The notes: generated from the letters alone by a model not told the origin. 64,000 nucleotides of DNA from Macrostomum lignano (GCA_002269645.1 NIVC01002026.1:1-64000), one strand, 5' to 3'; numbered from the stretch's first letter, positions 7,031 to 38,930 are shown. Program-made: numbers and translations.

Positions 7031-10000
7031 ATGGTAAACCACCAGGCGGATGCATCAGTCGACAGAATCAGGGAAGTCAGACGAAAACTTGTCCAGGACC
7101 TACTCAATGGCATTGAGCCTGATCCCAGAGCGTTAGACCCGACAGCGGATATTGAAGACAACCGTCAATTCAGCTCGCCAATTCTGCAAAAGCTGTACAC
7201 CACGGTGGAGCAATTCGGTGCTAGGAGCACCATACACGGTTTGCAGCACATCTTCCATTCCAGGGAGCTGACTCGCCGGATATTCTGGCTGGTTCTGATG
7301 CTGGTCGCATTGTGTCTGGGCCTGGCGCACATGCACGCTACTGCGATGGAATTTCTAAGCAATCCACTGACTTCCCAGCTGAAACTAATGAGCGAGCAGG
7401 TGAAATTTCCAGACATCACTTTGTGCAACTTGAAGCCAGCCTCCGAGTCGATGTCTCTGGCTCCGGAGTTTCGCCAGTACATCCGCGATAAATGGGGCTA
7501 CTTCGACAATTGGTACGTCGAAGAGAGGAAACGAAGAGGGAACGAGAGCAAAGTGAACTTTTATGAACGAGCGCGGCTTGTGTTCGGCCGGCTGTTCCAG
7601 ATCCTGTGGGTCTCTGGTGACTCGCGCGATATCGGAGTCCTGGACGTCACCCTTCTTCTGGATTGCTCCTACAACAGCATGAAATGTCACCAAAAAAACT
7701 TCAGTCTGAGGCAGAATTATCGCTTTTGGAATTGTTACACGTTCTTCGTGCACAAGGACAACTTGGTCACGGGAAAGGGCGGCAAGGGGGCCGAACTTGA
7801 CTTGGTGCTGTTCACTGACAACCACAACACCGTACGACTTGAGGATTTGGACGGCAGCGCTAGGCAGAAAAATCTCAGCACTGGAATCTATAAGAGAAGT
7901 CGGCAGATGGAAGAGCAGGTTAATTTTATTAATTTATTTAACCTCAGAGGTGTTGCTTTCCTTTGTGGAGGCAACAAAGAGGGAATAAATTTAGAAATAA
8001 AGATACTCCATATGAAACGGGCCTTAAACCAGTGCATCTCTGAAACCAATCCTTAAGCCATGGCTTAACTATAGAGCCTTAAACTAGCTCTTCCATTGAT
8101 TCTTTGCATGTGAGCAACGCCCACTAAGACCCTTTGCATCTGAGCAGTTTTCCATGAGCCTGAAGTAAACTTCTTTTTTGGTGCAGCAACATGCCCAATA
8201 AAGTTCAAGTTCAAATGCAACTTTGGTTAATCAAAAAAGCATGGTGCTATGTTGTTAACTCTTATACAGGAACCGATATCACTGAAAGAATTGCTCAACG
8301 AGGCCACAGGACTCAACCACCTGCTCACTGAAGGCAGCTACGAACCCGGCGGATTTCGCGTCTTTATCCACGAGAGGAAGCTGTACCCGATGCTCAGTGA
8401 GTAGTTTTTGACGGTTGAACTACATTCGACCCTCCATTGACTGGGGGTTGCCGCTTGCCGCACACATGCGCACACACACACACACACACCCACCAATTAC
8501 ACCAACTAAACCTAACAAGGCTTTCGCACCAGGTGCGCCAAAAACAGGGGCGCCAGAACCACGTGCGCCAAAGCGGGCGCACTACAATGGACTTAAAACC
8601 ATCCAGACGCTTACCAAATCCAATGCAGGTCGCGAATTCGTGGACGTGCAGTCAGGGACCAAATCAATAATTAAATTGCGACCCTTGCAGCATTCGCTGC
8701 TCTCCAGCGCCGCGCACCAGTGCACACCGAGAAGCGCCGCAGAAAATGTGTCTTACGTCCGTTACTTTGCTCACGGATCCAAGCATATTGGACACAAAAA
8801 ATATCAGAAAACTGATAGCGACTTTGTGGCTGAAGAGAAACAGAATCTCGTGCATGAAAACTGCGGCTGCTATTCTCACAGGTGGGCGTTATGCTAAGTG
8901 GTATGACATAATGATAAGCGTACTTACGATTAACAAACTGTTCTATTAATGTCACTCTGTCCGAATGTCACTCTGTCCGAATGTCACTCTGTCCGAATGT
9001 CACTCTGTCCGAATGTCACTCTGTCCGAATGTCACTCTGTCCGAATGTCACTCTGTCCGAATGTCACTCTGTCCGAATGTCACTCTGTCCGAATGTCACT
9101 CTGTCCGAATGTCACTCTGTCCGAATGTCACTCTGTCCGAATGTCACTCTGTCCGAATGTCACTCTGTCCGAATGTCACTCTGTCCGAATGTCACTCTGT
9201 CCGAATGTCACTCTGTCCGAATGTCACTCTGTCCGAATGTCACTCTGTCCGAATGTCACTCTGTCCGAATGTCACTCTGTCCGAATGTCACTCTGTCCGA
9301 ATGTCACTCTGTCCGAATGTCACTCTGTCCGAATGTCACTCTGTCCGAATGTCACTCTGTCTGAATGTCACTCTGTCCGAATGTCACTCTGTCCGAATGT
9401 CACTCTGTCCGAATGTCACTCTGTCCGAATACCACTATGTCCGAATGTCATCGTATCAGGTTGAAGTCACTTTTGGCCACAAATTTCAGGTACCCATTCA
9501 CAGTAGACAACAGTGAGCTGTGCTACTATGTGCCACCATCCAGCTGGAAGACTCCTCCTGAGCAGGTGCTCAGGAAAATCCGATGTCACGATCGCTGGAT
9601 CCTAGACGCCGAGAAGCGAACTTACGAGCTGATGCAGAAATTTCATTCGAAAAGATTCTGCGAGTTCACTCTGTACCGACCCTTGGAGCAGAGCAGCTCG
9701 TGGCCTCGTTTTGAGCACGTTCAAGACATTTGGACGGATTTCATCGCCCCGAAAATTGCCTCTGGCAAAGAGTTCACGATGGAATGCGGGCACAATCACC
9801 ACATCTTTAACAGGACCGAAACTGCAGCCTTTAATCGGTAGGGATTTGAGTTGGCCTTGGGACATTGGGGAATGATGAATAAAGATATCAGACATCGGGG
9901 AATGAGGAATATATTAATTAAAAATTGGTGAATGATGAATATGTTAATCAGAAATTGATGAGTGATAAAGGTTGATATCAGAAATTGGTAAATAATGATT

Positions 10001-12600: not shown

Positions 12601-14811
12601 TCATTGCAGCAGATTGCGTTGCTTGCCTGCAGCATCAGACGTTCTTTTTTGATCAGCGACTGTCTGCAGCAGAAACTTCGTCAGTTCCTGATAGCCCCCT
12701 CTAGCAGCAGCTTCCGCTGCCTCTATGCAACAACGGGTTCTCTTTTCTTGGTCAGAAACTGACTGAACCAGAAACTTCACAACTTCTAGCCTTCCAGATC
12801 TTGCAAAAAAGCTGGCCGCCTTCATGCAGCACTGATCTCGGTTTGTTTGATCAGCGACTGACTGCACCAGAAACTTCATCACTTCTAACTGACCATAAAT
12901 TGCGGCAGGCTCCACGGCTTCCATGCAGCAGTGATCTCTTTTTTCTTGGTCAGAAACTGTCGGCACCAGAAACTTCAAAGCTTCTAATTGACCATAAATT
13001 GTGGCAGGTTCCACAGCTTTCATGCAGCACTGATCGCTTTTTTCTTGGTCAGCGACTGTCGGCACCAGAAATTTCAGCACTTCTAACTGACCATAAATTG
13101 CGGCAGGTTCCACAGCTTTCATGCAGCAGTGATCTCTCTTTGCTTCGTCAGCAACTGACAGCACCAGAAACTTCACCACATCTAAATGACCATAAATTGC
13201 AGCAGGCTCCACCGCCTCCATGCAGCACTGATCTCTGTTTGTTTGGTCAGCAACTGTCTGCACCAGAAACTTCACCACATCTAAATGACCCTGTTCTGAA
13301 GCCCATTTTGCTGCCTCCATCAAGTACTGATCTCTGTTTGTTTGGTCAGTAACTGTCTGCACTAGAAACCTCACCACTTCTAAGTCACCATGAATTGCAG
13401 CAGGCTTCACGGTCACCATGCAGCACTGATCTCTGCTTGTTTGGTCAGCGACTGTCTGCACCAGAAAGTTGATCAATTCTAACGGACATTTTTTGGCAGC
13501 TTGTTTTGCTGCCTCTATGCAGCACTGATCTCTGTTTGTTTGGTCAGCGATTGTCTGCACCAGAAATTTCAGCACGTCCCACTGACCATTGGCTGCAGCA
13601 GATGTGGCTGCCTTCACACAGCACAGATCTCTCTTCGCTTCGTCAGCAACTGACGGCACCAGCAACTTCACCACATCTAAATGACCATAAATTGCAGCAG
13701 GCTCCACGGCCTCCATGCAGCACTGATCTCTGTTTGCTTGGTCAGCAACTGTCTGCACCAGAAACTTCACCACAACTAAATGACCCTGTTGTGAAGCACA
13801 TTTCGCTGTTTCCATGCAGCATTGATCTCTGTTTGTTTGACCATCGGTTGCCTGCACCAGAAACTTCAGCACTTCTAAGTGACCATCTTTTGAAGCACAC
13901 TTTGCTGCTTCCATGCAGCACTGATCTTTCAAAATTTGGTCAGAGACGGTCTGGACCAGTAACTTTGTCATTTCTAACTGACCCTTTGCTGCAGCAGATT
14001 CCGCTTCCGTCATACAGAACTGATCCCTCAAACTTTGATCAACGACCGTTTGCACCAGAAACTTCACAACTTCTAACTGACCTTCTGCTAGAGATTTTGC
14101 TGCTTTGATGCAGCACTGATCTCTCTTTGCTTCGTCAGCGACTGTCTGCACGAGAAACTTCAGCACTTCCCACTGACCATTGGCTGCAGCAGAAGTCGCT
14201 GCCTGCACGCAGCACCGGTCCCTCAGGGTTGAATCAGAAACTGTCTGCACCAGAAACTTCACTACTTTCCACTGACCGTTTCTTTCAGCAGAGCTCGCTG
14301 CCTCTATGCAGCAATAATCTTTTACACTTTGGTCAGCCACTGTCTGCACCAGAAACTGCACCACTTCTAACTGACCAGAACTTGCTGCCGGTTTGGATGC
14401 GTCTATGCAACACTGATATCTGCTTCTTTGGTCAGCCACTGTCTGCACCAGAAACTTCACCACTTCTAACTGACCAGAACTTGCTGCCGGTTTCGATGCG
14501 TCTATGCAACACTGATATTGTTTTCTTTGGTCAGCCACTCTCTGCACCAGATACGTGACTACTTCCCACTCACTCTTCCTTGCAGCATGTTCCACCGCCT
14601 CCACGCAGCAGCGATCCTTTACACTTTGGTCAGCAATCCTCTGCACCAGAAACTTCACCACTTCCCACTGACCACGCTGGGCAGCCAGGCGCGAATTTTG
14701 TATGCAAAATCGAGCTTTTCTTCTTTCCCCTAGTTGAAGCCAGAGACGAGCTCTCAAAGCTATGATGTTTACACTGGTGACGGCTCCATGTCGGCTGAAG
14801 CTCTGACCCAT
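12601..14811 (-). CDS. Atypical ankyrin-like repeat protein (21 x 33 aa), 736 aa
   Basis: Single long ORF with repeat consensus xxAAxxGHLEVVKFLVQTVADQxxRDQCCMEAx. The AAxxGHLEVVKFLV half is canonical ankyrin. N-terminus MGQSFS. Confidence 0.85.
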   Translation of the reverse strand: MGQSFSRHGAVTSVNIIALRARLWLQLGERRKARFCIQNSRLAAQRGQWEVVKFLVQRIADQSVKDRCCVEAVEHAARKSEWEVVTYLVQRVADQRKQYQCCIDASKPAASSGQLEVVKFLVQTVADQRSRYQCCIDASKPAASSGQLEVVQFLVQTVADQSVKDYCCIEAASSAERNGQWKVVKFLVQTVSDSTLRDRCCVQAATSAAANGQWEVLKFLVQTVADEAKRDQCCIKAAKSLAEGQLEVVKFLVQTVVDQSLRDQFCMTEAESAAAKGQLEMTKLLVQTVSDQILKDQCCMEAAKCASKDGHLEVLKFLVQATDGQTNRDQCCMETAKCASQQGHLVVVKFLVQTVADQANRDQCCMEAVEPAAIYGHLDVVKLLVPSVADEAKRDLCCVKAATSAAANGQWDVLKFLVQTIADQTNRDQCCIEAAKQAAKKCPLELINFLVQTVADQTSRDQCCMVTVKPAAIHGDLEVVRFLVQTVTDQTNRDQYLMEAAKWASEQGHLDVVKFLVQTVADQTNRDQCCMEAVEPAAIYGHLDVVKFLVLSVADEAKRDHCCMKAVEPAAIYGQLEVLKFLVPTVADQEKSDQCCMKAVEPATIYGQLEALKFLVPTVSDQEKRDHCCMEAVEPAAIYGQLEVMKFLVQSVADQTNRDQCCMKAASFFARSGRLEVVKFLVQSVSDQEKRTRCCIEAAEAAARGGYQELTKFLLQTVADQKRTSDAAGKQRNLLQ

Positions 14812-19100: not shown

Positions 19101-20650
19101 GCTGTTTTGTGATCTGCATCGGGTCGCTTGGGCCGACCGCTAATCAGGCGATCGATAGGGTGGATAAGTGAGCCTGTCAATCTCATAAAATATCACGCTT
19201 TTGATTCAATAGTCAGGCTGTAAAACCGGAATCATCTCACCTCATAGAGTCACACTTGAAGTAGAATACCACGCCTTTTCCTAATAATTTTACCCAGATA
19301 ATCTTATTGCTAGATAATCCACCGATCCTCAGAATCACACCTCAGAGAGAATCACACCTCAGAGAGAATCACACATCAGAGAGAATCACACCACAGAGAG
19401 AATCACACCTCAGAGAGAATCACACCTCAGAGAGAATCACACCTCAGAGAGAATCACACCTCAGAGAGAATCACACCTCAGAGAGAATCACACCTCAGAG
19501 AGAATCACACATCAGAGAGAATCACACCACAGAGAGAATCACACCAACAGAGAGAATCACACCTCAGAGAGAATCACACCTCAGAGAGAATCACACCTCA
19601 GAGAGAATCACACCTCAGAGAGAATCACATCTCAGAGAGAATCACACCTCAGAGAGAATCACACCTCACAGAGAATCACACCTCACAGAGAATCACACCT
19701 CAGAGAGAATCACACCTCAGAGAGAATCACACCTCAGAGAGAATCACACCTCAGAGAGAATCACACCTCAGAGAGAATCACACCTCAGAGAGAATCACAC
19801 AACAGAGAGAATCACACCCGAGAGAATCACACACGAGAGAATCACACTGGAGATTCACATGCAAAACAATTGTTCAAGTACCGAATCAGCACTGCCAAAT
19901 ATTGCAGAGCGCTGGCTCTCCGCAAAGCTGCTCTGCAGTCGATCATTCTGACAGTCTGCGGTCTCATAAAGACGCTCTTAGTTGTTCTGAGCATACGCAT
20001 CTACAGTATCGAATATGACGAGTCCTGGACAGAGTACGGCGTGCACTGGAATGCGTACTACTCCTTGGCGGTGGCCCGGGGCCTCGGCGCCACCCTGGAG
20101 CTGCTGGTCCTGCCGCGGTCGCTGCCACCGCTGGCTGCGGCGCTGGCATCGGCAGCAGCTCACGAGCTTCTACTGGCAGGCGGCCTCGCTGAGCTGGTGC
20201 TGGCGCCGGGCCAGCCGCAGTCCCACAACCGGTCCAATCTAATTGGCCAGAACCGGGAGGGCCTGGCCTCGATTCCCGGCCTGGTCACTTTGTACTTTTG
20301 CGGTCTTCAGTTAGGCAGGTGGATGAAGCCGACCGAGTCGGGCTCCAAGTTTGCCGTGCCGGCGCGGCTGCTGGCGCTGATGGTCGCCGCGGCTGCCGTG
20401 CGGCCGCTGACGATGGCCAGCGACGGTTTCTGGCTGCTGCCGGAGTCCCGGCGGCTGATGAACCCCGCCTACTGCGGCTGGCTGCTGGCCTTCTCCTGCT
20501 TCAACCTGGGCGGCGTCTGGCTCGTGCTGGAGGCTGCCGACAAGCTGCGCGTTATGGCCGAGCCCCGAGACAGCTGCAGCAGCACTGCGGGAGCTGCGGA
20601 GACGCGGCGGACACCAATTCACCTGCAGGAGGTGGGAATGCATCACTGCC

Positions 20651-20743
<93 letters not shown>

Positions 20744-20746
20744 TAG

Positions 20747-20781
<35 letters not shown>

Positions 20782-21055
20782 ATTTTTTAAATTAAAAAAA
20801 TTAAATTTCCACAATCTTACCCAGGTGGACTCAACAGGCCTGCTCTACTTCCTGATCTCCAACCTGCTCACCGGCCTGCTCAATCTGGTTCTCAGCCGTC
20901 TGTTCCCCAACCGAGAATCGCTTGACGGAAGCCCCTGTTCCCTGATCATCCTGGCCTACTCAGCCGCCGCCTTCTCCTGCAGTCGCTTGGCCAGTCGCTG
21001 GTTCAGCTTTCGCGATCTGCAGACCGCCTTGATGCAGCGGCTCAAAAAAGCTTGA
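16125..21055 (+). CDS. PIGW: GPI inositol acyltransferase PIG-W/GWT1, 585 aa, 5 exons
   Basis: Exons 16125-16269, 17757-17967, 18721-19167, 19908-20631 and 20825-21055 sum to 1758 nt in frame. Motifs: KTxxFGTGLMDVGIG, TEYGVHWN, NREG, SRRLMNPAY, YFLISNLLTGLLNL. The exon 2 donor (GTCATT) is weak, so that boundary is less certain. Confidence 0.9.
16488..17720. repeat. 17-bp tandem repeat (CATAGAATCGCCCCAAC), PIGW intron 1
   Basis: Seen directly. Confidence 0.97.
18040..18625. repeat. Same 17-bp tandem repeat, PIGW intron 2
   Basis: Seen directly; same orientation as 16488-17720. Confidence 0.97.
19330..19850. repeat. 17-bp tandem repeat (AGAGAGAATCACACCTC), PIGW intron 3
   Basis: Seen directly. 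Confidence 0.97.
20648..20780. repeat. (TGTC)n microsatellite, PIGW intron 4
   Basis: Seen directly. Confidence 0.95.
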
Positions 21056-27857: not shown

Positions 27858-28450
27858 ACTCCCCAAGAATCTGTCCTCAAACTCCCCAAGAATCTGTCCT
27901 CAAACTCCCCAAGAATCTGTCCTCAAACTCCCCAAGAATCTGTCCTCAAACTCCCCAAGAATCTGTCCTTTAACTCCCTAAGAATCTGTCCTCAAACTCC
28001 CCAAGAATCTGTCCTCTAACTCCCCAAGAATCTGTCCTTTAACTCCCTAAGAATCTGTCCTCAAACTCCCCAAGAATCTGTCCTCAAACTCCCTAAGAAT
28101 CTGTCCTCAAACTCCCTAAGAATCTGTCCTCAAACTCCCCAAGAATCTGTCCTTTAACTCCCCAAGAATCTGTCCTCAAATTCCCCAAGAATCTGTCCTC
28201 AAACTCCCAAAAATCTGTCCTCAAAGTCCCCAAGAATCTGTCCTCAAACTCCCCAAGAATCTTTCCTCAAACTCTCCAAGAATCTGTCCTCAAACTCCCC
28301 AAGAATCTATCCTCTAACTCCCCAAGAATCTGTCCTCAAACTCCCCAAGAATTTGTCCTCAAACTCCCCAAGAATCTGTCCTCAAACTCCCCAAGAATCT
28401 GTCCTTTAACTCCCCAAGAATCTGTCCTCAAACTCCCCAAGAATCTGTCC
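27858..28450. repeat. 22-bp tandem repeat (AACTCCCCAAGAATCTGTCCTC), about 27 copies
   Basis: Seen directly; abuts the truncated RT. Confidence 0.96.
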
Positions 28451-31400
28451 TTACCATACTTATGTCCTTACCATAGATGGTGAGTTTCCGCATACTCCAC
28501 TTCCGCTTCCTGGTGAAGATAATGGCCATCGTCTTAGCGGTGCTAATGGTTAGGCCGTGCCGGGTAGCCCAGGCTTGCGCCTTATCGGCGAACTGCTGCA
28601 TCAAGCTTCGGAGGGTGCTGGTGTCAGGGCCACTGACAATAGCAGCAACATCATCAGCGTAGCCTGCCTTGACTATGCTGCTGGGGACGTCAGCCGTCAG
28701 GAGCTCGTCCATCACGAGATTCCAGAGCAGCGGGGTGAGCACCCCAACTTGGGCTCCGCCCTTAGTAACCGTATGGGTGCAGGTGGCATCCATGAGAAAG
28801 GAAGTCACCTTCCTGTTCCGGATCATAAAGTCGATCCATCGCACAATGCTGGATCGGACCTTTTTCTGCAAAAGGGAGTCACTGAAGGAGCCAAATAAAA
28901 CGTTATTGAAGCCCCCATCGATATCGCAGAAAAGCCCACAGGCAATCTGCTTACTCAGGATAGCTTTCTCAATGGCTGAGGTAATAACATGCAAAGCGTG
29001 CTCGGTGGTTTTACCTGGTTGGAAGGCGAATTGGTGCTTACTTATGGGTGCCGTCCTTAACTCGCAGTCGCGCAGCCTCCACAAGATGAGTCTCTCCATC
29101 AGCTTTATACAGAAGGATTTTAGGCTGATGGGGCGGAAAGATTTAACATTGGTATAGTCGTCTTTGGCAGGCTTGGGATGAAGACCACCCGAGCGGTCCT
29201 CCAGATAGTGGGAATATACCCAGTGGTGAAACAATCAATGATGAGCTTAGAGAAAAAGGCATAGAAGCTCTGCAGCTTAACCGCTTCCTGGAGAACACAG
29301 GGGGCGATATTATCAATGCCGGGGGCTTTGAACGGTTTAAAAGTGTTGGCGGCCAGCTGAATTAAGTTCTTGGTGGCGCACTGCTCGAAGAGTTGTCGAT
29401 CTCTCGGGTTGTGATCAGCAACGATTTGCTCAGGATGCTCGCATGTGGGGAAAAATGACGAGAAAAGCAGATTGAGGGATTCCTCGGAGGTTCTGGAATA
29501 GTTGCCATCCAAATGGAGGAGGGAGTTACACTGGGCGAGGTTGTCATGCCTGAGGGACTTGACCAGCCGGGCAGTAGGATGCTGGCCCTCCAAACCGGCA
29601 CAGAAGGCCTTCCAGGTGTCCTTTTTGGCCTTCCGGATACAACTCTTGTGGGTTCTCAAAGCAGAGTGGTAGTTGTCCCAGTCTTCTGGGGTGTTGTTCC
29701 GGTTGGCAATCCGATGCAGCCGACGGGAGGCCTTTTTCAAGCGGGTGAGCTCCTTGTTCCACCAAGGTGAGTACTTCTTTCTACTGACAATCGGAGGAGC
29801 GTTCTTAATCGAGGCCGCATTAAGCAGCTCGACACATTTGTTGCAACGTGCTTCAATGCTCGGAATATCATCGCAGCCTTCCAGGTCATCGGCCGGTTCG
29901 CTGCTGATCAGAGACTCAAGGTCCCTTATGAAGCCAGTCCAGTCCGCCCTTTTTAAATTGGGACGGTTCGCCTTGGTGACGCGAGCGCCGCCAGCTGTGA
30001 CGCTGAAATGGATGGTAATGGTCCGAGAGCGAGGGGACCTGACCATCCATTTTTAAATCCGATTAAGGATGCTACTGGACGTAAGGGTGAGGTCAATGAC
30101 CTCCTTCCTGCTAGCATTCGCAAAGGTGGGTTTACGCCCCAAGTTGCAAATATGCGAATTCGAGGTGTTAATGAAATCAATAAGCAGACTACCTCTGAGG
30201 TTAGTGTTACTGCTAGCCCACGCAGTGTTGTGAGCATTAGCGTCGCAACCAATAATGAGGTTCCGGTTCTCGATGGTACAGAAGCTTGCGAGATCCTGCA
30301 GGGGGGGGTGACGGAATTTCATCCTGGATGTCCATGTACACGGATGAGAAAATCATCCCGTTCACGGTGAAGGTACAGATGCCTTTATTGCAAAACATCG
30401 GCATGAGCATGGCTGAGAGCTCGCACTTGACCAGGGCAATGGCCCTAGGGGTTTCCCCTCTAGAGAGGAAGAGGATCTTGTAGCCTTTCGGCAGCAGGGT
30501 GGGCTTACCTCTCACGGTGTAAGGCTCCTGAATGAGGTAGATGTCAACACGGGTGCCACCGAGGGTGTTGGTGAGGCTGCTGGAGGCTGCGACCGCGTGG
30601 TGCAGGTTGATCTGCACAATGTGCAGGTTAGGATCACTGTTTTGCGTGAGTGTAGTAAAATCATCATTGGACCCACCCGCAGGGTTGGTCCTCAGACGGT
30701 CACGCCTCATCATTGATGATCTGGGCATGGCAGATCGAGAACAGCTTAAGTCTCGCCCTCAGAGCTGTCCGGGCTCTCGGGGTCGTCCCGGCGCTGCTCA
30801 CCGCCGGCGTTGCGGTGGAAGACTAACTTCCATGCCCCAACATAGGCGGCGTGGTCTTTGCCTTGCATGTGGGGCTCCCACTCAGCGGAGAGGCCCATGT
30901 AGAGGGTCTTCCCGTTGCCGTCCTTGGCCGGCACTTCCTTGTAGGCCCGCAGAGGCCGTCCGCAGGCAACTCGGGGGGCTTGGCGACAAGACGACTACGG
31001 ATCTCCTCGATCGTCCTGTGCCGTGCGGTCCTCAGGCTGCTGCCTCTTGCGGACAGTGCTGGGAGCCGCGTTCGCCTTGCTGTCGCGGTACGTGGTTGAG
31101 TCACCACCAGAATCTCCACCAGTGGGAGTCGAACTTACCCCTCCCGAGCCGAAAAATATTTTGTTCACAATCCATAGAAGCTGAAACGGAGAAGAAACAC
31201 AAATTAGAAAAGGCAGACCGACCGCTCGGGGACTGGATATACCCCCAGTCAGCCAAAGGCTACCCCTGCCACAGCGAACAGCAGGAAGGCTTTGGGTTGC
31301 CATCTTTCCCGCAGGATTGCTCCCAGGCGAGGCTCCGGCAGGCCCCCGGTCCACACTCTGCAAGATCAGGGGGCGGGAGGCCGGCTGCGGGCTTGGGACA

Positions 31401-31832: not shown

Positions 31833-32254
31833 TGGAAGGGTCAAGTTCGGCGTTCCGTCTGCTGTCAGGTTGAAATTGAAAGCCGCTCCTTTCTGTCTGT
31901 TTTTCTAAGCTCTGTGGAGCTTCGGCAGTTTCGAGTGACGATTTAAAAACTCTTGCTCCTGCTGAACTCAGGGACTTCTAGACTGGAATTTCTTGCAAAC
32001 TTCTGCTAATGATCCTTGGCTAAATTATGACTCCACGTGCTAATATAGCCATAGATAGCATTTGTGCCAGCAGTGAGATCTGGTCAAGCGTCTAATTTGA
32101 ATGCCCGCAGTTCAAACTTGACTGCATAATGCTATAAAAGGAAATTGTTTTGGTTTCGAAGATAAACAAAAATATATAATTAGGTCTCGATACAGTGTGA
32201 CAGTTAGAGTAAACACATTTTTCTGTCTGCACAGTGTTAAATAATTATTGGCTG

Positions 32255-32306
32255 TGTGTCTGTGTGTCTGTCTGTCTGCATGTCGGCATGTCTGTCCGTC
32301 TGTCTC

Positions 32307-32344
<38 letters not shown>

Positions 32345-32345
32345 A

Positions 32346-32412
<67 letters not shown>

Positions 32413-32420
32413 CGTATGTC
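32255..32420. repeat. (TGTC)n microsatellite
   Basis: Seen directly. Confidence 0.93.
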
Positions 32421-32597
32421 TGTGGCCCTATAGACAGACATAGATAAACAGATAGACCGACACAAGCCTCATTCATTTCAATTGGCCCGTGGCAGCGCTG
32501 CCAATGGCAGACAATTGTGACGCAAATGAGCAGAAATAGATAAATTCCAGCAAAATGCGGCGCTCTCCGCAATACACAGCACCGATACGGAGCCGAA

Positions 32598-35500
32598 ATG
32601 GAAGCTCTTTGGAGAATCCTGACAGCGATTGCAGCAGTTCTGATGCAGACCTTCGGCAGGTCCGCAGGCCAAAGCGAGGGCCTTGATGGCACTGAGCTGG
32701 ACATCCTGGAAGCTGACGTCAATCTTCAACGAAACACTGGCGAGTCACCTCTCTACATTGCATCACAGAATGGTGACCACCAAGTTGTGAGCTCACTCAT
32801 CAAAGCGCAAGCTGACGTCAATCTTCAAGAAGTCGATGGCTGCTCACCTCTCTACATTGCATCACAGAATGGTCACCACCAAGTTGTGAGCTCACTCATC
32901 AAAGCACAAGCTGACGTCAATCTTCAAAACGTCAATGGCTGCTCACCTCTCTACATTGCATCACAGGAGGGTCACCACCAAGTTGTGAGCTCACTCATCA
33001 AAGCACAATCTGACATCAATCTTCAAAACGTCAATGGCTGCTCACCTCTCTACATTGCATCACAGAATGGTCACCACCAAGTTGTAAGCTCACTCATCAA
33101 AGCACAAGCTGACGTCAATCTTCAAAACGTCAATGGCTGCTCACCTCTCTACATTGCATCACAGGAGGGTCACCACCGAGTTGTGAGCTCACTCATCAAA
33201 GCACAAGCTGACGTCAATCTTCAAAACGTCGATGGCTGCTCACCTCTCTACATTGCATCACAGGAGGGTCACCACCAAGTTGTGAGCTCACTCATCAAAG
33301 CGCAAGCTGACGTCAATCTTCAAAACGTCGATGAGTGCTCACCTCTCTACATTGCATCACAGAATGGTCACCACCAAGTTGTGAGCTCACTCATCAAAGC
33401 ACAAGCTGACGTCAATCTTCAACAAAACACTGGCGAGTCACCTCTCTACATTGCATCAGGGTATGGTCACCACCAAGTTGTGAGCTCACTCATCAAAGCA
33501 CAATCTGACGTCAATCTTCAAGAAGTCGATGGCTGCTCACCTCTCTACATTGCATCACACAATGGTCACCACCAAGTTGTGAGCTCACTCATCAAAGCGC
33601 AAGCTGACGTCAATCTTCAACGAAACACTGGCTCGTCACCTCTCTACATTGCATCACAGAAGGGTCACCACCAAGTTGTGAGCTCACTCATCAAAGCACA
33701 AGCTGACGTCAATCTTCAACGAAACACTGGCGAGTCACCTCTCTGCATTGCATCACAGAATAGTCACCACCAAGTTGTGAGCTCACTCATAAAAGCACAA
33801 GCTGACGTCAATCTTCAAAACGTCAATGGCTGCTCACCTCTCTACATTGCATCACAGAATGGTGACCACCAAGTTGTGAGCTCACTCATCAAAGCACAAG
33901 CTGACGTCAATCTTCAAGAAGTCGATGGCTGCTCACCTCTCTACATTGCATCACAGAAGGGTCACCACCGAGTTGTGAGCTTACTCATCAAAGAACAAGC
34001 TGACGTCAATCTTCAAGAAGTCGATGGCTGCTCACCTCTCTACATTGCATCACAGAATGGTCACCACCGAGTTGTGAGCTTATTCATCAAAGCACAAGCT
34101 GACGTCAATCTTCAAGGAAACACCGGCGAGTCATCTCTCTACATTGCATCACAGAATGCTCACCACCAAGTTGTGAGCTCACTCATCAAAGCACATATCG
34201 ATAGTCAAGAAGTGGCTAAAAGTACATTCGCTGTGGAAGAGCCACCGAAACAGTTAGATTTTGTGTAAGATTCATTTTTTATTCTAAATAACTCTTTTGA
34301 TTAGTTTTTCACGGATCCGAAGAAGATTAGGCAATTGTGCAAGCAAGCGGTCATGAGAGGCAGTGTTGGCAGTTGGCAGCAGAAAAGCTGGCAAACAGGT
34401 GAAATCGAGAGCTTGCTGAATGCTGAGTCAAGATGGATTTAACATGGCTGATATCACAGGAGAGTACATGTGCTCACACGGTTTATCCCTGTTGCAAGTA
34501 AATGCAATGTGAATGTGGAGTTCAGGACTCCATCTACCGCCATCCCCATAATCATCATCGTCAGCAAATCAGGTTTTCCGATTTACTCGGACCGCTCAGA
34601 CCCGTTCGACCAATAAAGTTCCCTCGTAACCATGCCACTCTACAGACACTCTAATTGGCAGTCACGGAAATGGACCATTTTCAGGAGCACACTTTTCTCC
34701 GGACATTAAGCTCAATTATGGACCCACCTCCAGCATGCCCCAACTCACCTCCAGCATGCCCCAACTCACCTCCAGCATGCCCCACCCCACCCTTAGCATG
34801 CCCCACCCCACCTCCAGCATGACCCACCCCACCTCCAGCATGACCCACCCCACCTCCAGCATGCCCCACCCCACCCTTAGCATGCCCCACCCCACCTCCA
34901 GCATGACCCACCCCACCTCCAGCATGCCCACCCCACCTCCTTCCTGCCCCACCCCACCTCCTTCCTGCCCCACCCCACCTCCGGCCTGCCCCACTCTACA
35001 TCTCTGATCTAAAATATCAAATCCTCATCGCTGAATCAACTCTTTTCCCACCTGCCAACCATATCACAGACACTCTGCATGGAAACTGTATGGGCAGCCA
35101 TGGAAATTGGACAGTTTTTCAGGAACAAAGCATGCACACATTTGCTCTAAACTAAACTAAAAGAACTAATTAAAGGATCAACTGCCTGCAAAATGATCAG
35201 CAAAATCAATTCACGCACTGTTCGGGAGAGCTGCCCTGTGCTACACAAATCAGTCAATTAACCCGTCTAGACCTGCAAGTTTTTCACCTATAACTCACAT
35301 TTTAGATGCAGTCCCAGCGACTCAGAGCTGAGCCATCAGCTGCACTCAGCACTGGAGCAGTCAGGCTTCACCGAATCCCGAGCCGCATTGCAGAGCGCGG
35401 CTGCCGATGTCCTGCAGCAGATTCTAAGAAGTCGACTGAACGTCGATAATTATTTTGTCGTCGGCAGCTACTCAGAAGGCTGGGGCAACAGCCTGACGAC

Positions 35501-38104
35501 ACTGGACGGCAGAACTGACGCCAATTCCGACATTGATGTGATGCATTTGATTCCCGGCCGAGAATACCACCAGAAAAGTCTGTGCGAGTGCGATGGAGCT
35601 CCGGAGCAGCACGAGTTGGTGAACGGGCACATTCAGTGCTCAGGATTCGGTGAGTTCTCTCTTGGGGAGTGAGATTGTCTGGTAGTTTTTTATGACTGTT
35701 AGAGATTCTGGCAGTGAGATGTTTGCTTGTTGTGTGCAAAGCATTGGTGCAGAAAATATTCTGAATGAGACAGCTGGAATCAGTCAGCAGATCTAAACAA
35801 GAGCCTGACTATCCTGACAGTCTGTGTTGGCAACCTGCATTTATTTTGCACAAGCTGTTAAAACCTGCATATTTTTAACCCGCTGAAGTTCGATCTCCGG
35901 ATCTCTTTGCATGCATTCTGAAATCTGAAGTCATGCTCAAACAAAGCTTGTTAATAGCTAGGATAGGGGTGAGACAAACTTGGAGTGAATTTGGAATTTA
36001 AACTCTTAAGCCAGGACACGGGATTATAAAATGCAACTTTAAAGTGAAATGATAAGAAGCGATGGCGATTGCCGTCTGAGTGAAATGGAAAAGCAATGAT
36101 GCTGTCCAAGTGTTCTACAGAAACCAAGCAGAGTAGGCATGCAAAACGTCAGCAAAACCAATAAAGAACATGTGTGAGAAGTGATCAAATATTATTTAGT
36201 ATACAAAGTGCAAATTGATAGTAGAAGTTCTTGTTTCAGAAGGTTCACAACAAACAGTTCAACCATGTCCTTGAGTTCCGTGTCCTAGGGTTGGTCCACT
36301 CTGGCAAGAATGTAAGAAAACTTGGCAAGATTGTTGGATTTAAATTTGAGTAGGATTGTTAAAAGTGCAGCAATGCTATGGAGGATTCAGAGAAAAATTG
36401 GCATTACTTTCAGGTAAGAAGACTCGAATTTAGGGAACTTATAGGTAGCCTTTGACCTCTCTGTTGTGAGTTTAGGGTGGGTGCAAATATGGTGTCATTT
36501 GGTTGGGCGGTTTCTAAAGCTGCATATTGTCCGAGCAGTCCAAGGCATCACCGCACAGACTCAAAGCTGTATATTGCCCAATCGGGAACCGAATCGTTTT
36601 TACAGCCTCCAACCCTGCTGATGCGACAGACGGATGCACACTGAGGCCAGCGCTGGACAATGTCTCTGCATGCGGTCTCTGCCGCTACCCGCCCATCGCG
36701 CCGCTGCTGCCAAACCGCGTCTCCAACATCCCCCATGCGGTGCTGGAGGCTCTCCGGAAGGTTCTCACCTCCGCCTCATCGCCCTGTCACGTGGTGTACG
36801 CAGCCTCTCCTGACCGAGGAGGCGAAGAGCTCCGTGTGAGCACCAGCTTCCTGGAGAACCGGATGCTGCGAAGTCTCACTACCCTGCAAGGTCAACTGTT
36901 CGTCACACTCAAATACCTGGTCAAGAAGGTCATCTGTCACAAGAATGGCTTCAATCAGCAAGGCTTGAAGTCCTACCACGTGAAGACCATCACCTTCCGA
37001 ATGGTGGACGAGACGCCGGTCGAGCAGTGGAAGAAGGAGAACCTCGTGAGTCTCACGAGACAGTCGCTGCAGATGCTGCTCGACTGTGTGGAGAAGAGCC
37101 GAGAGCAGGACAGACAAACACCTGACACACCTGACCGATCTCGGGGTCGCATCATGAACCATTTCTTTCTCAGCGATGCGGCCATCTACCTCAAGGGTGC
37201 GGACAAGGAGAGAGCGGACCAGCATTTGGACGGCATCATGAGCACACTGAGAACAGTAATCGATCGGCTGCCCCAACTGCTGCAGCAGTTCATCGGCAGT
37301 CTCAGACCTGTGAGCGACTCAGGCACATTCTACTTCCACCCGTTCCAAATCCTGCCGGATCTGAGGCCGAAACCACTCACGAAGTCCAGTACTCTCGAGT
37401 ACTATCAGATCTACGACGTGGTGAGAGAGTGTCTGGTGCGTCTCTCGCGCAGTGACTGCAGCCAGCGATCTCAGGAGTCGCTCACAGAGCTGATTGCCAG
37501 ACTGCCAGACTGCGCCCTCTCAGCACGGGAGGCTCTCAGAGCGCTGGCTTGCCTGAAGTTCGGCTACCGAGAAACTGCAGAGAGAGTCGTGAGCTCGTGC
37601 TCAGGTCACTCGGTGAGCAGAGGCATCGCTTGGTCACGTGAGAAGTCGGCGACTGAAGCGACTGCGGAGTTCGTGATGCGGCATCTGAGCAGCCGCGACT
37701 CGGCGTGGAAGTTTTGCTTTGAGTTCGACCAGCGACCGAAACTCGAGTTCTTGACAGGAGCTCTGAGGGAGTGCTTTCCCCTCGGGTTTTCAAACGGAGT
37801 TGTCCATTTCTACATGAACTTTGATGCTCTGCTGTGGGCTCTGCGGCTCGAGCTGCGGACTGATCGAGAAGCGCGCGCTCAGGACTGGATCCGGGAGGTG
37901 GCTGAGAGAGAGGACTCGGATGAGCAGGAGCTGCTGGTTGCCGCTTTGAATTCTTCGAATCTGGAGCAGGTTCAGGAAATAGTAAAAAAGCTGAAGATGA
38001 TGAGAGCAGATCTTCTCAATTGGCTGAAGGCGAGACTTCAAGAAAAATGGAGCGATCAAACTCAGGAAGTTCCGAGTAAAAAACGAAAACTGTCTTGCTT
38101 GTGA
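32598..38104 (+). CDS. Ankyrin-repeat / Mab-21 cGAS-like nucleotidyltransferase (cGLR) fusion, about 1169 aa, 3 exons
   Basis: Exon 1 32598-34264 (15 ANK repeats, donor GT|GTAAGA), exon 2 35306-35649 (VVGSYSEG..SDID, donor G|GTGAGT) and exon 3 36606-38104 (acceptor TTTTACAG|CC; LDNV, LRVSTSFLENRML, LKYLVKK, LKSYHVKT, NHFFL) sum to 3510 nt in frame. The Mab-21 part is secure. The ANK-to-NTase splice is inferred, and a small extra exon near 34331-34427 is possible. Confidence 0.82.
34716..34992. repeat. 21-bp C-rich tandem repeat (CCACCTCCAGCATGCCCCACC), intronic
   Basis: Seen directly. Confidence 0.9.
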
Positions 38105-38227
38105 GCTGGTAACTATACGCTCGTATTTCTATTTGCCTTGAATCGAAATTTCGATTTTTAAACAAAATTTTCAGTTTAACATTCTGCTATTCTCTTATTA
38201 TCGAACTTAACCAATTCCGCTTTCACC

Positions 38228-38930
<703 letters not shown>

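What the first reader, a model, noticed from the sequence alone, without database searches (positions are those of the whole stretch)
32598..38104. Ankyrin-array / cGAS-like receptor (ANK-cGLR): candidate modular innate-immune sensor
Seen: three exons splice in frame into 15 ANK repeats, a helical linker, a nucleotidyltransferase core (GSYSEG..SDID, with a likely third Asp in LDNV), Mab-21 motifs (LRVSTSFLE, KYLVKK, SYHVKT as in human cGAS, NHFF), a helical tail of about 250 aa and a terminal PSKKRKL NLS-like motif. No cGAS zinc-thumb is evident. Known: cGAS/cGLRs make cyclic dinucleotides when activated by ligand. Inference: the ankyrin array is a swappable ligand-binding module gating second-messenger synthesis, i.e. 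a diversified receptor system in an invertebrate.
Basis: partly seen in the sequence, partly recalled or inferred. Interest (0 to 1): 0.88.

Follow-up and report, generated by a model that had tools for sequence, protein, structure and literature searches.

The report
Flatworm ankyrin-fused cGAS-like receptor gene
This is an intact three-exon gene of the flatworm Macrostomum lignano. It joins 15 ankyrin repeats to a cGAS-like signalling enzyme. It is real and well formed, but it belongs to a gene family that a 2023 survey of animal cGAS-like receptors already catalogued.

Summary
Exons 32598-34264, 35306-35649 and 36606-38104 (+) splice in frame through canonical sites into a 1169-aa protein.

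- **Architecture:** a short hydrophobic N-terminus, 15 ankyrin repeats (a 99-bp tandem array), a cGAS/Mab21-fold nucleotidyltransferase, a roughly 280-aa helical tail and a C-terminal KKRK motif.
- **Gene model:** both intron positions match an annotated M. lignano paralogue, and paralogue proteins read straight across both junctions.
- **Enzyme fold:** the AlphaFold model (pLDDT 85) matches human cGAS, MB21D2, MAB21L1 and oyster Cv-cGLR1.
- **Active site:** Gly-Ser, Asp-x-Asp and the third Asp are invariant or nearly invariant across paralogues.
- **Zinc thumb:** the cGAS zinc thumb is absent.

It is not new. Li et al. 2023 list ankyrin-cGLR fusions as a known architecture. They cloned five M. 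lignano members of this same family without the ankyrin part, and none is among their 15 named active enzymes.

The window copy is 92% identical to PAA67719.1. Its one distinctive feature is a nearly homogeneous ankyrin array whose few differences cluster on the canonical binding surface.

Enzymatic product, ligand, the role of the ankyrin array and any downstream receptor are untested. I did not check whether Macrostomum has STING.

Verdict: a new member of a known kind, of moderate to low interest.

The parts
32598..34264 (+). Exon 1. It encodes the start codon, the hydrophobic N-terminal peptide, the 15 ankyrin repeats and a short acidic linker, and ends in codon phase 2.
   Evidence: ORF listing. 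GTAAG donor at 34265. The N-terminus is homologous to the N-termini of P0008 and P0046 and to an internal segment of model P0076.
32598..32657 (+). Conserved N-terminal hydrophobic peptide, MEALWRILTAIAAVLMQTFG. It could be a membrane anchor or an amphipathic helix. Its function has not been tested.
   Evidence: Similar peptides occur in paralogues P0046, P0055, P0008 and P0076.
32710..34195 (+). Array of 15 ankyrin repeats, encoded by a 99-bp tandem repeat. In my reading register the units start at 32730 and follow every 99 bp, and unit 15 is degenerate.
   Evidence: Tandem Repeats Finder: 15.0 copies, 91% matches, no indels. Pfam Ank families. Repeat-by-repeat analysis.
34265..35305 (+). Intron 1. 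It contains a 21-bp tandem repeat at 34723-34994.
   Evidence: Sequence and repeat finder. The intron position is conserved in the paralogue locus L002.
35306..35649 (+). Exon 2 (about 115 aa). It encodes the spine helices and the N-lobe of the nucleotidyltransferase, including Gly609-Ser610 (35463-35468) and Asp631-x-Asp633 (35529-35537).
   Evidence: Sequence and reading frame. G, S, D and D are invariant in alignment A2. The model places them after strand 1 and at the start of strand 2.
35650..36605 (+). Intron 2. Relative to the closest M. lignano copy it carries an indel of about 600 bp.
   Evidence: GTGAGT donor and tttttacag acceptor. Comparison with locus L001. The intron position is conserved in L002.
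36606..38104 (+). Exon 3. It encodes the rest of the catalytic domain (third Asp688 at 36656-36658), the Mab-21 C-lobe, the helical tail, the KKRK motif and the stop codon.
   Evidence: Sequence and reading frame. D132 of the 613-aa query (Asp688 of the full protein) aligns with the invariant Asp of mollusc cGLRs.
36905..37099 (+). Mab-21_C (HhH/H2TH-like) segment, containing KYLVKK and SYHVKT.
   Evidence: Pfam PF20266 scores 25.1 bits against a cut-off of 24.1. It aligns with cGAS and cGLR chains in the PDB.
37265..38101 (+). Family-specific, mostly helical C-terminal tail of about 279 aa. Its function is unknown.
   Evidence: AlphaFold model with pLDDT 80. No PDB fold match better than E = 0.59. 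Conserved across paralogues.
38072..38092 (+). PSKKRKL, a motif that resembles a monopartite nuclear localisation signal.
   Evidence: Sequence. P0008 ends with the similar APKKKVRMS. No localisation test was possible.

Best explanation
The locus is an intact, previously unlisted paralogue of the Macrostomum lignano ANK-cGLR family. This is a flatworm-specific expansion of cGAS-like receptors.

**Shown:**
- One three-exon gene encodes the N-terminal hydrophobic peptide, 15 ankyrin repeats, a cGAS/Mab21-fold nucleotidyltransferase and a family-specific helical tail.
- The Gly-Ser and Asp-x-Asp residues are invariant across the aligned paralogues, and the third Asp is nearly so.
- The differences between the ankyrin repeats cluster on the canonical ankyrin binding surface.

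**Inferred:**
- The protein is an active nucleotidyltransferase that makes a nucleotide second messenger when switched on.
- The ankyrin array, and possibly the tail, is the protein-interaction module that recruits or recognises the activating partner. It would either hold the enzyme in an off state or bring it to its activator.
- Different paralogues, carrying different ankyrin arrays, would cover different targets.

The product, the ligand and the downstream receptor are all unknown.

The confidence of 0.55 applies to the whole statement, including the inferred mechanism. For the shown part alone (an intact ANK-cGLR family member) I would put it at about 0.9.
For: **Gene model:**

**Source organism:** 94% nucleotide identity, introns included, to M. 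lignano contig NIVC01001460.1. All named protein hits are M. lignano, apart from one contig deposited as a bacterial genome bin.

**Fold:**
- The AlphaFold model has pLDDT 85 and pTM 0.87.
- Foldseek top hits are human cGAS (E = 1.5e-6, target TM 0.59), MAB21L1, MB21D2 and Cv-cGLR1. Bacterial CD-NTases rank lower.

**Sequence:**
- Pfam Mab-21_C scores above its cut-off.
- The ankyrin-free family profile hits only cGAS and cGLR chains in the PDB. The best is 8gjy 'cGAS-like receptor 1' at E = 3.4e-8.
- hhalign against seven mollusc cGLRs from Li et al. gives 99.4% probability and E = 2e-21. The third Asp sits on their invariant Asp.

**Active site:** G53, S54, D75 and D77 are invariant and D132 is at least 90% conserved in 11 diverse paralogues. 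The motifs GSYSE and SDIDVM mirror human cGAS GSYYE and EFDVM (the human motifs are from my own knowledge).

**Ankyrin array:**
- Among 14 full units there are at least 23 nonsynonymous changes against 3 synonymous ones.
- 62% of pairwise nonsynonymous differences fall on 7 of the 33 positions. These are position 1 plus the six positions randomised in designed ankyrin binders.

**Family diversity:** at least 45 clusters, with variable ankyrin content.

**Published classification:** Li et al. 2023 class relatives as cGLRs.
Against: - No activity data exist. The five M. lignano constructs in the Li et al. screen carry no 'active' note in Table S3, although they were expressed without the ankyrin part.
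- The N-lobe gives no hit to the Pfam Mab-21 core model. Sequence alignments to cGAS start only at the third-Asp strand.
- Placing GS and DxD in the active site therefore rests on motif form, predicted strand order and conservation.
- Variation on the ankyrin surface is also what relaxed constraint alone would produce.
- The counts within the array are not independent events, and the excess of nonsynonymous changes over the whole unit is not significant on its own.
- cGAS and STING are reported lost in other flatworms (PMC4117786, PMC13563047). No receptor for a product has been identified in Macrostomum.
- The closest genomic copy (L001) has no ankyrin exon within 8 kb upstream.
Confidence: 0.55

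Rival explanations
1. The ankyrin array is not the sensor. The ligand, for example a nucleic acid, binds the nucleotidyltransferase core or the tail as in cGAS and other cGLRs. The ankyrin repeats, together with the N-terminal hydrophobic peptide, only place the enzyme at a membrane or scaffold, or couple it to downstream partners.
For: - All characterised cGLRs sense ligand through the enzyme domain (Li et al. 2023).
- Several paralogue cores are basic, with pI 8.3-9.1, as Li et al. report for nucleic-acid-sensing cGLRs.
- A conserved hydrophobic N-terminus suggests targeting.
- One paralogue model (P0076) joins that N-terminus directly to the enzyme with no ankyrin repeats.
Against: - The core of this copy is mildly acidic, with pI 6.2.
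- The Li et al. constructs, which lacked the ankyrin part, are not listed as active with the pooled nucleic-acid ligands.
- Ankyrin differences cluster on the binding surface.
Confidence: 0.3
2. The ankyrin exon and the enzyme exons belong to separate transcripts or genes, and the in-frame splice is fortuitous.
For: - The closest genomic copy (L001) has homology only from intron 1 onward and no ankyrin exon within 8 kb upstream.
- Some database models of close paralogues lack ankyrin repeats (P0001, P0038, P0076).
Against: - The splice sites are canonical and in frame.
- P0187, P0002 and P0015 read from ankyrin repeat through the same linker into the enzyme.
- The annotated paralogue PAA59246.1 has ankyrin and enzyme in one gene, with both introns at the same positions.
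- Many full-length models of 830-1378 aa share this architecture.
Confidence: 0.07
3. It is a non-enzymatic Mab21-fold protein, like MAB21L1 or the MiD49/MiD51 mitochondrial adaptors. It would use the fold to bind a nucleotide or a partner without making a signal.
For: - MAB21L1 is among the top fold matches.
- MiD49/51 also combine an N-terminal membrane anchor with this fold (my own knowledge).
- No activity has been reported for relatives.
Against: - GS, DxD and the third Asp are invariant or nearly invariant over paralogues as little as 33% identical to this protein.
- Li et al. state that Mab21L1/2/3 lack a predicted functional active site.
Confidence: 0.08
4. The 15-unit, nearly uniform ankyrin array is an assembly artefact, with the copy number mis-estimated in a tandem repeat, or the copy is a decaying duplicate.
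For: - The units are 84-98% identical at the DNA level. Tandem arrays this uniform are difficult to assemble correctly.
- This exact protein is not in the public protein collection. The best hit is 92% identical.
Against: - There is no frame break or stop in 1169 codons.
- The units differ from one another at defined positions, so they are not collapsed identical copies.
- Paralogues of 1146-1169 aa carry long ankyrin regions of comparable length.
Confidence: 0.05

Closest known systems
Macrostomum lignano ANK-cGLR proteins catalogued by Li et al. 2023 (PAA86972.1, PAA45980.1, PAA57558.1, PAA93208.1 and PAA68676.1 were cloned; PAA58690.1, PAA67649.1 and PAA68216.1 are listed with Ank_2 domains). 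The closest database protein is PAA67719.1.
   Same: - Same species and the same family: 33-39% identity to four of the five cloned constructs (the fifth was not aligned), 92% to PAA67719.1 and 50-60% to many others.
- Same order of ankyrin array, enzyme and tail, and the same catalytic motif.
   Different: - This copy is not in the protein collection at more than 92% identity.
- Its 15 ankyrin units are nearly identical to one another, whereas the repeats of full-length paralogues are diverse.
- Its enzyme core is more acidic.
ANK-cGLR fusions of the coral Stylophora pistillata, and the 'ANK-cGLR' architecture class of Li et al. 2023 (Fig. 1C, 4C)
   Same: An ankyrin repeat module fused to a cGLR nucleotidyltransferase, proposed there as a ligand- or protein-interaction domain.
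   Different: - A different phylum.
- I did not compare sequences, so common origin versus independent fusion is untested.
- The conserved helical tail and the hydrophobic N-terminus were found here only in the Macrostomum family. I did not check whether the coral fusions have them.
Human and mouse cGAS
   Same: - Bilobed nucleotidyltransferase fold.
- GS, [D/E]x[D] and third Asp.
- The RxSxS..E and SYHVKT motifs of the C-lobe.
   Different: - No zinc thumb.
- No basic disordered N-terminus; the N-terminal region is an ankyrin array instead.
- A loop between GS and DxD that is 9-10 residues longer.
- An extra tail of about 280 aa.
- About 14% identity in the fold alignment.
Mollusc cGLRs (for example Crassostrea virginica Cv-cGLR1, PDB 8gjw) and PDB 8gjy 'cGAS-like receptor 1'
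   Same: - The best sequence-level relatives with solved structures.
- hhalign probability of 99.4% against seven mollusc cGLRs.
- Shared GSxxEG and SDxDxM motifs.
   Different: - The seven mollusc sequences compared are cloned enzyme-domain constructs, so their full-length architecture was not examined.
- The alignment covers only the region from the third-Asp strand to the end of the C-lobe.
MAB21L1, MB21D2 and MiD49/MiD51 (Mab21-fold proteins without proven signalling chemistry)
   Same: - Same fold.
- MiD49/51 also carry an N-terminal membrane anchor (my own knowledge).
   Different: - MAB21L1/2/3 lack a predicted functional active site (Li et al.), and by my own knowledge MiD49/51 lack the catalytic acids. 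Here the triad is conserved.
- I did not check the active site of MB21D2.

Membership tests
cGAS-like receptor (cGLR) / Mab21-fold nucleotidyltransferase | Bilobed cGAS/Mab21 nucleotidyltransferase fold | tested here: met
   The AlphaFold model has pLDDT 85. The Foldseek PDB top 16 hits are all cGAS, MAB21L1, MB21D2 or Cv-cGLR1, with E = 1.5e-6 to 6e-5 and target TM 0.47-0.59.
cGAS-like receptor (cGLR) / Mab21-fold nucleotidyltransferase | Sequence-level homology of the C-lobe (Mab-21_C) to cGAS and cGLRs | tested here: met
   PF20266 scores 25.1 bits against a cut-off of 24.1, which is borderline. The family profile hits only cGAS/cGLR chains in the PDB, best E = 3.4e-8. hhalign against mollusc cGLRs gives 99.4% probability and E = 2e-21.
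cGAS-like receptor (cGLR) / Mab21-fold nucleotidyltransferase | Sequence-level match of the N-lobe to the Pfam Mab-21 nucleotidyltransferase model (PF03281) | tested here: inconclusive
   There is no hit at E <= 1. The fold match spans about 390 columns, which includes the N-lobe, and the GSxxEG and SDxDxM motifs are shared with mollusc cGLRs.
cGAS-like receptor (cGLR) / Mab21-fold nucleotidyltransferase | Complete active site: G-S, [D/E]-x-[D/E] and a third acidic residue | tested here: met
   G609/S610 and D631/D633 are invariant, and D688 is at least 90% conserved, in 11 paralogues. D688 aligns with the invariant Asp of mollusc cGLRs. The predicted strand order fits the fold. No residue-level superposition was possible.
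cGAS-like receptor (cGLR) / Mab21-fold nucleotidyltransferase | Relatives included in the published cGLR catalogue | tested here: met
   Li et al. 2023 Table S3 rows 89-93 and Table S2 list M. lignano family members with Ank_2 domains. Four of those constructs align at 33-39% identity.
cGAS-like receptor (cGLR) / Mab21-fold nucleotidyltransferase | Synthesis of a nucleotide second messenger, switched on by a ligand | not testable with these tools
   This needs biochemistry. The M. lignano constructs in the Li et al. screen have an empty 'Note' column, so they are not among the 15 named active enzymes.
cGAS-like receptor (cGLR) / Mab21-fold nucleotidyltransferase | A cognate receptor (STING or other) in the same genome | not tested
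   The Macrostomum genome cannot be searched with these tools. A word-indexed search with a vertebrate STING would be too insensitive, so I did not run it. The literature reports STING loss in Schistosoma and planarians, and I found nothing on Macrostomum.
Vertebrate-type cGAS (DNA sensor orthologue) | Zinc thumb H(x5)CC(x6)C between the RxSFS..E motif and the next helix | tested here: not met
   In the profile alignment, the cGAS segment that carries the thumb falls in a gap of this family. It is therefore a cGLR, not a cGAS orthologue.
Ankyrin repeat proteins | Tandem 33-residue repeats that match the ankyrin profile | tested here: met
   Ank_2 E = 1e-161, and Ank matches 14 stretches. There are 15 units of 99 bp.
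Catalytically inert Mab21 proteins (MAB21L1, MiD49/51) | Loss of the catalytic acidic residues | tested here: not met
   The catalytic residues are present and conserved, so I do not file the protein here.

The most novel reading that the evidence does not exclude
The Macrostomum family is a lineage-specific receptor repertoire in a phylum otherwise thought to have lost cGAS-STING. On this reading the ankyrin arrays, variable on their binding surface, recognise proteins directly, for example pathogen or danger-associated proteins. The enzyme's signal would then go to a receptor other than STING. This would be a cGLR class that senses proteins rather than nucleic acids, with the conserved tail and the N-terminal anchor as further, undescribed parts.
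Probability: 0.2. Interest if true: 0.7.

Novelty: new member of a known kind. Interest (0 to 1): 0.3.

Why it matters
cGLRs are a major family of animal innate-immune sensors, and for most of them neither the ligand nor the product is known. Flatworms are usually described as lacking cGAS and STING. A large ANK-cGLR expansion in Macrostomum, an experimentally tractable flatworm, is therefore a convenient system for two questions:
- Can a fused repeat array act as the sensing module of a cGLR?
- What reads the signal if STING is absent?

This particular locus adds little beyond one more paralogue. It does offer a clean example: a recently homogenised array whose few differences sit on the binding face. 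It also draws attention to three conserved family features that I did not find mentioned in the parts of Li et al. I searched: the N-terminal hydrophobic peptide, a His/Cys cluster in the N-lobe, and a tail of about 280 aa with no match among solved structures.

Tried and rejected
1. **Exhaustive representative search.** I submitted alignment A1, whose profile kept the ankyrin columns (841 positions). The list was flooded by unrelated ankyrin proteins and could not show distant cGLR relatives. It only revealed more family-like models, for example P0049 with two enzyme units.
2. **Word-indexed searches.** I searched with the single protein and with the ankyrin-free profile. Every hit is M. lignano, except one 1-kb contig labelled as a Kangiellaceae genome bin. 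Absence from other animals is therefore not established.
3. **Single-sequence search of the PDB.** This gave only weak cGAS hits (E about 0.09). A family profile was needed to get clear matches.
4. **Fold search with the tail alone.** Nothing scored better than E = 0.59. The weak hits are TPR-like helical proteins, so I make no assignment.
5. **Second cGLR in the window.** I looked next to the ankyrin-like ORF at 12601-14811 and elsewhere. There is none.
7. **STING search.** I did not run one, because a vertebrate query through a word index would make a negative result meaningless.
8. **Nucleic-acid sensing judged from charge.** The core has pI 6.2, while paralogues range from 6.9 to 9.1. This is only a weak hint.

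Full report
**What is there**

The region 32598-38104 on the + strand carries three open segments.
- Exon 1 (32598-34264) ends at a GTAAG donor.
- Exon 2 (35306-35649) follows a ttttag acceptor and ends at a GTGAGT donor.
- Exon 3 starts at 36606 after tttttacag and runs to the TGA at 38102-38104.

With exon 2 fixed, only three AG sites give an open frame. Site 36606 has the best polypyrimidine tract. The spliced product is 1169 aa.

**Is the gene model right?**

All named protein hits are from the flatworm Macrostomum lignano, apart from one contig deposited as a bacterial genome bin. The locus is 94% identical at the DNA level, introns included, to M. lignano contig NIVC01001460.1. The window is therefore M. 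lignano or a very close relative.

Three lines of evidence support the splice junctions:
- The residues across both proposed junctions are contiguous in paralogue proteins. P0187 reads ..NGHHQVVSSLIKAQADV..HIDCQEVAKSTFAVELPPKQLDFGCSPSDSELSHQ.. P0001 and P0002 read ..NGHIQCSGFASNPA...
- In the annotated paralogue gene PAA59246.1 (locus L002), intron 1 lies between the ankyrin part and the enzyme at the homologous residue. Intron 2 lies before ..ASSPA.. The middle exon encodes 115 residues, as it does here.
- The N-terminus MEALWRILTAIAAVLMQTFG matches the N-termini of paralogues P0046, P0055 and P0008, and an internal segment of model P0076, so the ATG at 32598 is the likely start.

I could not test transcripts directly. 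There is one caveat: the closest genomic copy, L001, has no ankyrin exon within 8 kb upstream.

**Ankyrin array**

Tandem Repeats Finder reports a 99-bp unit in 15.0 copies, with 91% matches and no indels, at 32710-34195. Pfam ankyrin models match strongly.

The 15 units fall into two subtypes (RNTGES.. and xVxGCS..). The last unit is degenerate.

Among the 14 full units:
- 16 of the 33 positions vary in amino acid, and only 3 show synonymous variation. That is a minimum of about 23 nonsynonymous changes against 3 synonymous ones.
- 62% of pairwise nonsynonymous differences fall on positions 1, 2, 3, 5, 13 and 14, out of a set of seven positions tested. These correspond to the target-binding face used in designed ankyrin binders (my own knowledge).

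This fits a binding surface that is free, or driven, to vary while the scaffold is homogenised. It does not separate positive selection from relaxed constraint, and the repeats are not independent samples.

Full-length paralogues of 1146-1169 aa have ankyrin regions of similar length but with diverse repeats. The uniformity of the array is what sets this copy apart.

**Enzyme domain**

- Pfam detects only the Mab-21 C-terminal domain, just above its cut-off, and not the N-terminal Mab-21 model.
- A single-sequence PDB search is weak.
- An ankyrin-free family profile (A2) hits only cGAS and cGLR chains. The best is 8gjy 'cGAS-like receptor 1' at E = 3.4e-8, and mouse cGAS scores about 1e-6.
- A profile-profile comparison with seven mollusc cGLRs taken from Li et al. 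Table S3 gives 99.4% probability and E = 2e-21.
- The AlphaFold model of the 613-aa non-ankyrin part has pLDDT 85 and pTM 0.87.
- Its best PDB matches are human cGAS, MAB21L1, MB21D2 and Cv-cGLR1. Bacterial CD-NTases, NF90, Tut1 and OAS come next.

**Active site**

In A2, whose members are as little as 33% identical to this protein, Gly-Ser (G609/S610 of the full protein) and Asp-x-Asp (D631/D633) are invariant. The third Asp (D688, in ..RPALDNV..) is at least 90% conserved. D688 aligns with the invariant Asp of the mollusc cGLRs.

In the model, GS follows the first strand after the long spine helices, DxD opens the second strand, and D688 lies on a later strand. This is the order seen in cGAS.

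I had no coordinates, so a residue-level superposition was not possible.

The cGAS zinc thumb is absent. In the profile alignment it falls in a gap between the ..RVSTSFLE.. motif and the ..KYLVKK.. helix.

**Tail and termini**

The last 279 aa or so are conserved in the family and are predicted to be mainly helical with a small sheet (pLDDT 80). They have no significant fold match in the PDB.

The C-terminal PSKKRKL resembles a monopartite nuclear localisation signal. P0008 ends with a similar APKKKVRMS.

**What is already known**

Li et al. [quoted passage not shown]
- Some cGLRs carry ankyrin or TPR modules (Fig. 1C, S2A). Three Stylophora cGLRs are fused to ankyrin repeats or death domains.
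- Table S3 lists five M. lignano proteins cloned for the biochemical screen (rows 89-93). These are clearly the same family, with motifs such as ..GSFAEAWGNSL..DADVDV.. and ..LRFSTSFLER..
- Table S2 lists Ank_2 domains for these and for further M. lignano entries.
- The 'Note' column, which names the 15 active enzymes, is empty for the M. lignano rows.

I found no paper that discusses flatworm cGLRs further. Other work reports loss of cGAS and STING in Schistosoma and in planarians.

**How it most likely works**

Shown:
- One gene encodes the anchor-like peptide, the ankyrin array, the cGLR enzyme and the tail.
- The catalytic residues are kept under constraint across a large paralogue family.
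- Differences between the ankyrin repeats lie on the binding face.

Inferred:
- The protein is an active nucleotidyltransferase producing a nucleotide signal.
- The ankyrin array, perhaps with the tail, binds the activating or regulating partner.
- Paralogues with different arrays cover different partners.

Rivals:
- The array serves only as scaffold or targeting device, and the ligand is sensed by the core.
- The ankyrin exon and the enzyme exons are in separate transcripts.
- The protein is a non-enzymatic Mab21 protein.
- The repeat count is an assembly artefact.

**Verdict**

The functional reading is reasonable but untested.

The architecture and this flatworm family are already in the literature, though only in supplementary tables and without activity. 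I class the locus as a new member of a known kind, with interest 0.3.

**Methods caveats**

My one exhaustive-library search was wasted on a profile that still contained ankyrin columns. I therefore cannot say how far the family extends beyond Macrostomum.

Noticed in passing
window 32598-32657 (+): The first 20 residues, MEALWRILTAIAAVLMQTFG, form a hydrophobic segment conserved at the N-terminus of paralogues: P0046 MQAILRALASVLMQ, P0055 ..SAFFQSIAVVFMQ and P0008 MGFLQRLFSAVAACCL. It also occurs inside model P0076. It looks like a signal-anchor or an amphipathic helix. That sits oddly with ankyrin repeats and with a C-terminal motif that resembles a nuclear localisation signal.
   Followed up: partly
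window about 35568-35630 and 36680-36682 (+). Residues H644, C649, C651, H664 and C696 of the 1169-aa protein, which are H88, C93, C95, H108 and C140 of the 613-aa query.: A conserved H-x4-C-x-C-x12-H pattern plus one more invariant Cys lies in the N-lobe. All five residues are invariant or at least 90% conserved in alignment A2. This may be a zinc site, in a different place from the cGAS zinc thumb. Spatial proximity could not be checked without model coordinates.
   Followed up: partly
window 12601-14811 (-): - A 736-aa single ORF starts MGQSFS, which resembles a myristoylation signal.
- It contains about 21 Cys-rich, ankyrin-like 33-residue repeats (RDQCCMEAAK..G.LEVVKFLVQTVADQTN), and Pfam Ank families match it.
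- The same repeat type appears at the N-terminus of P0015, a cGLR-family model.
- No Mab21 domain lies next to it in this window.
   Followed up: partly
L001 (M. lignano NIVC01001460.1) compared with window 34931-38137: The closest genomic copy is 94% identical from the middle of intron 1 to past the stop codon. It has no ankyrin exon within 8 kb upstream. It also lacks about 600 bp that the window carries in intron 2 (window 35707-36313).
   Followed up: partly
P0032 and P0048 (database proteins): Fragments 43% identical to this family sit on 1-1.8 kb contigs. One was deposited as a 'Kangiellaceae bacterium' metagenome bin. This is most likely animal DNA in a marine metagenome, and it hints that relatives exist outside M. 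lignano.
   Followed up: no
P0049 (database protein, 1346 aa): This model contains two complete enzyme-plus-tail units in tandem, and the second unit has its own hydrophobic N-terminal peptide. It is either a true tandem cGLR, like OAS2 and OAS3, or two neighbouring genes merged by the annotation.
   Followed up: no
window 32252-32423, 34723-34994 and 38230-38500+: The gene is bracketed by long (CTGT)n and (TAGT)n microsatellites. Intron 1 holds a 21-bp tandem repeat of 13 copies.
   Followed up: no
window 7031-8056 (+), 19870-20790 (+) and 28428-29234 (-): Other coding fragments lie in the window: an amiloride-sensitive sodium channel (ASC) exon, a GWT1 (GPI-anchor acyltransferase) exon and a reverse-transcriptase remnant.
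   Followed up: no
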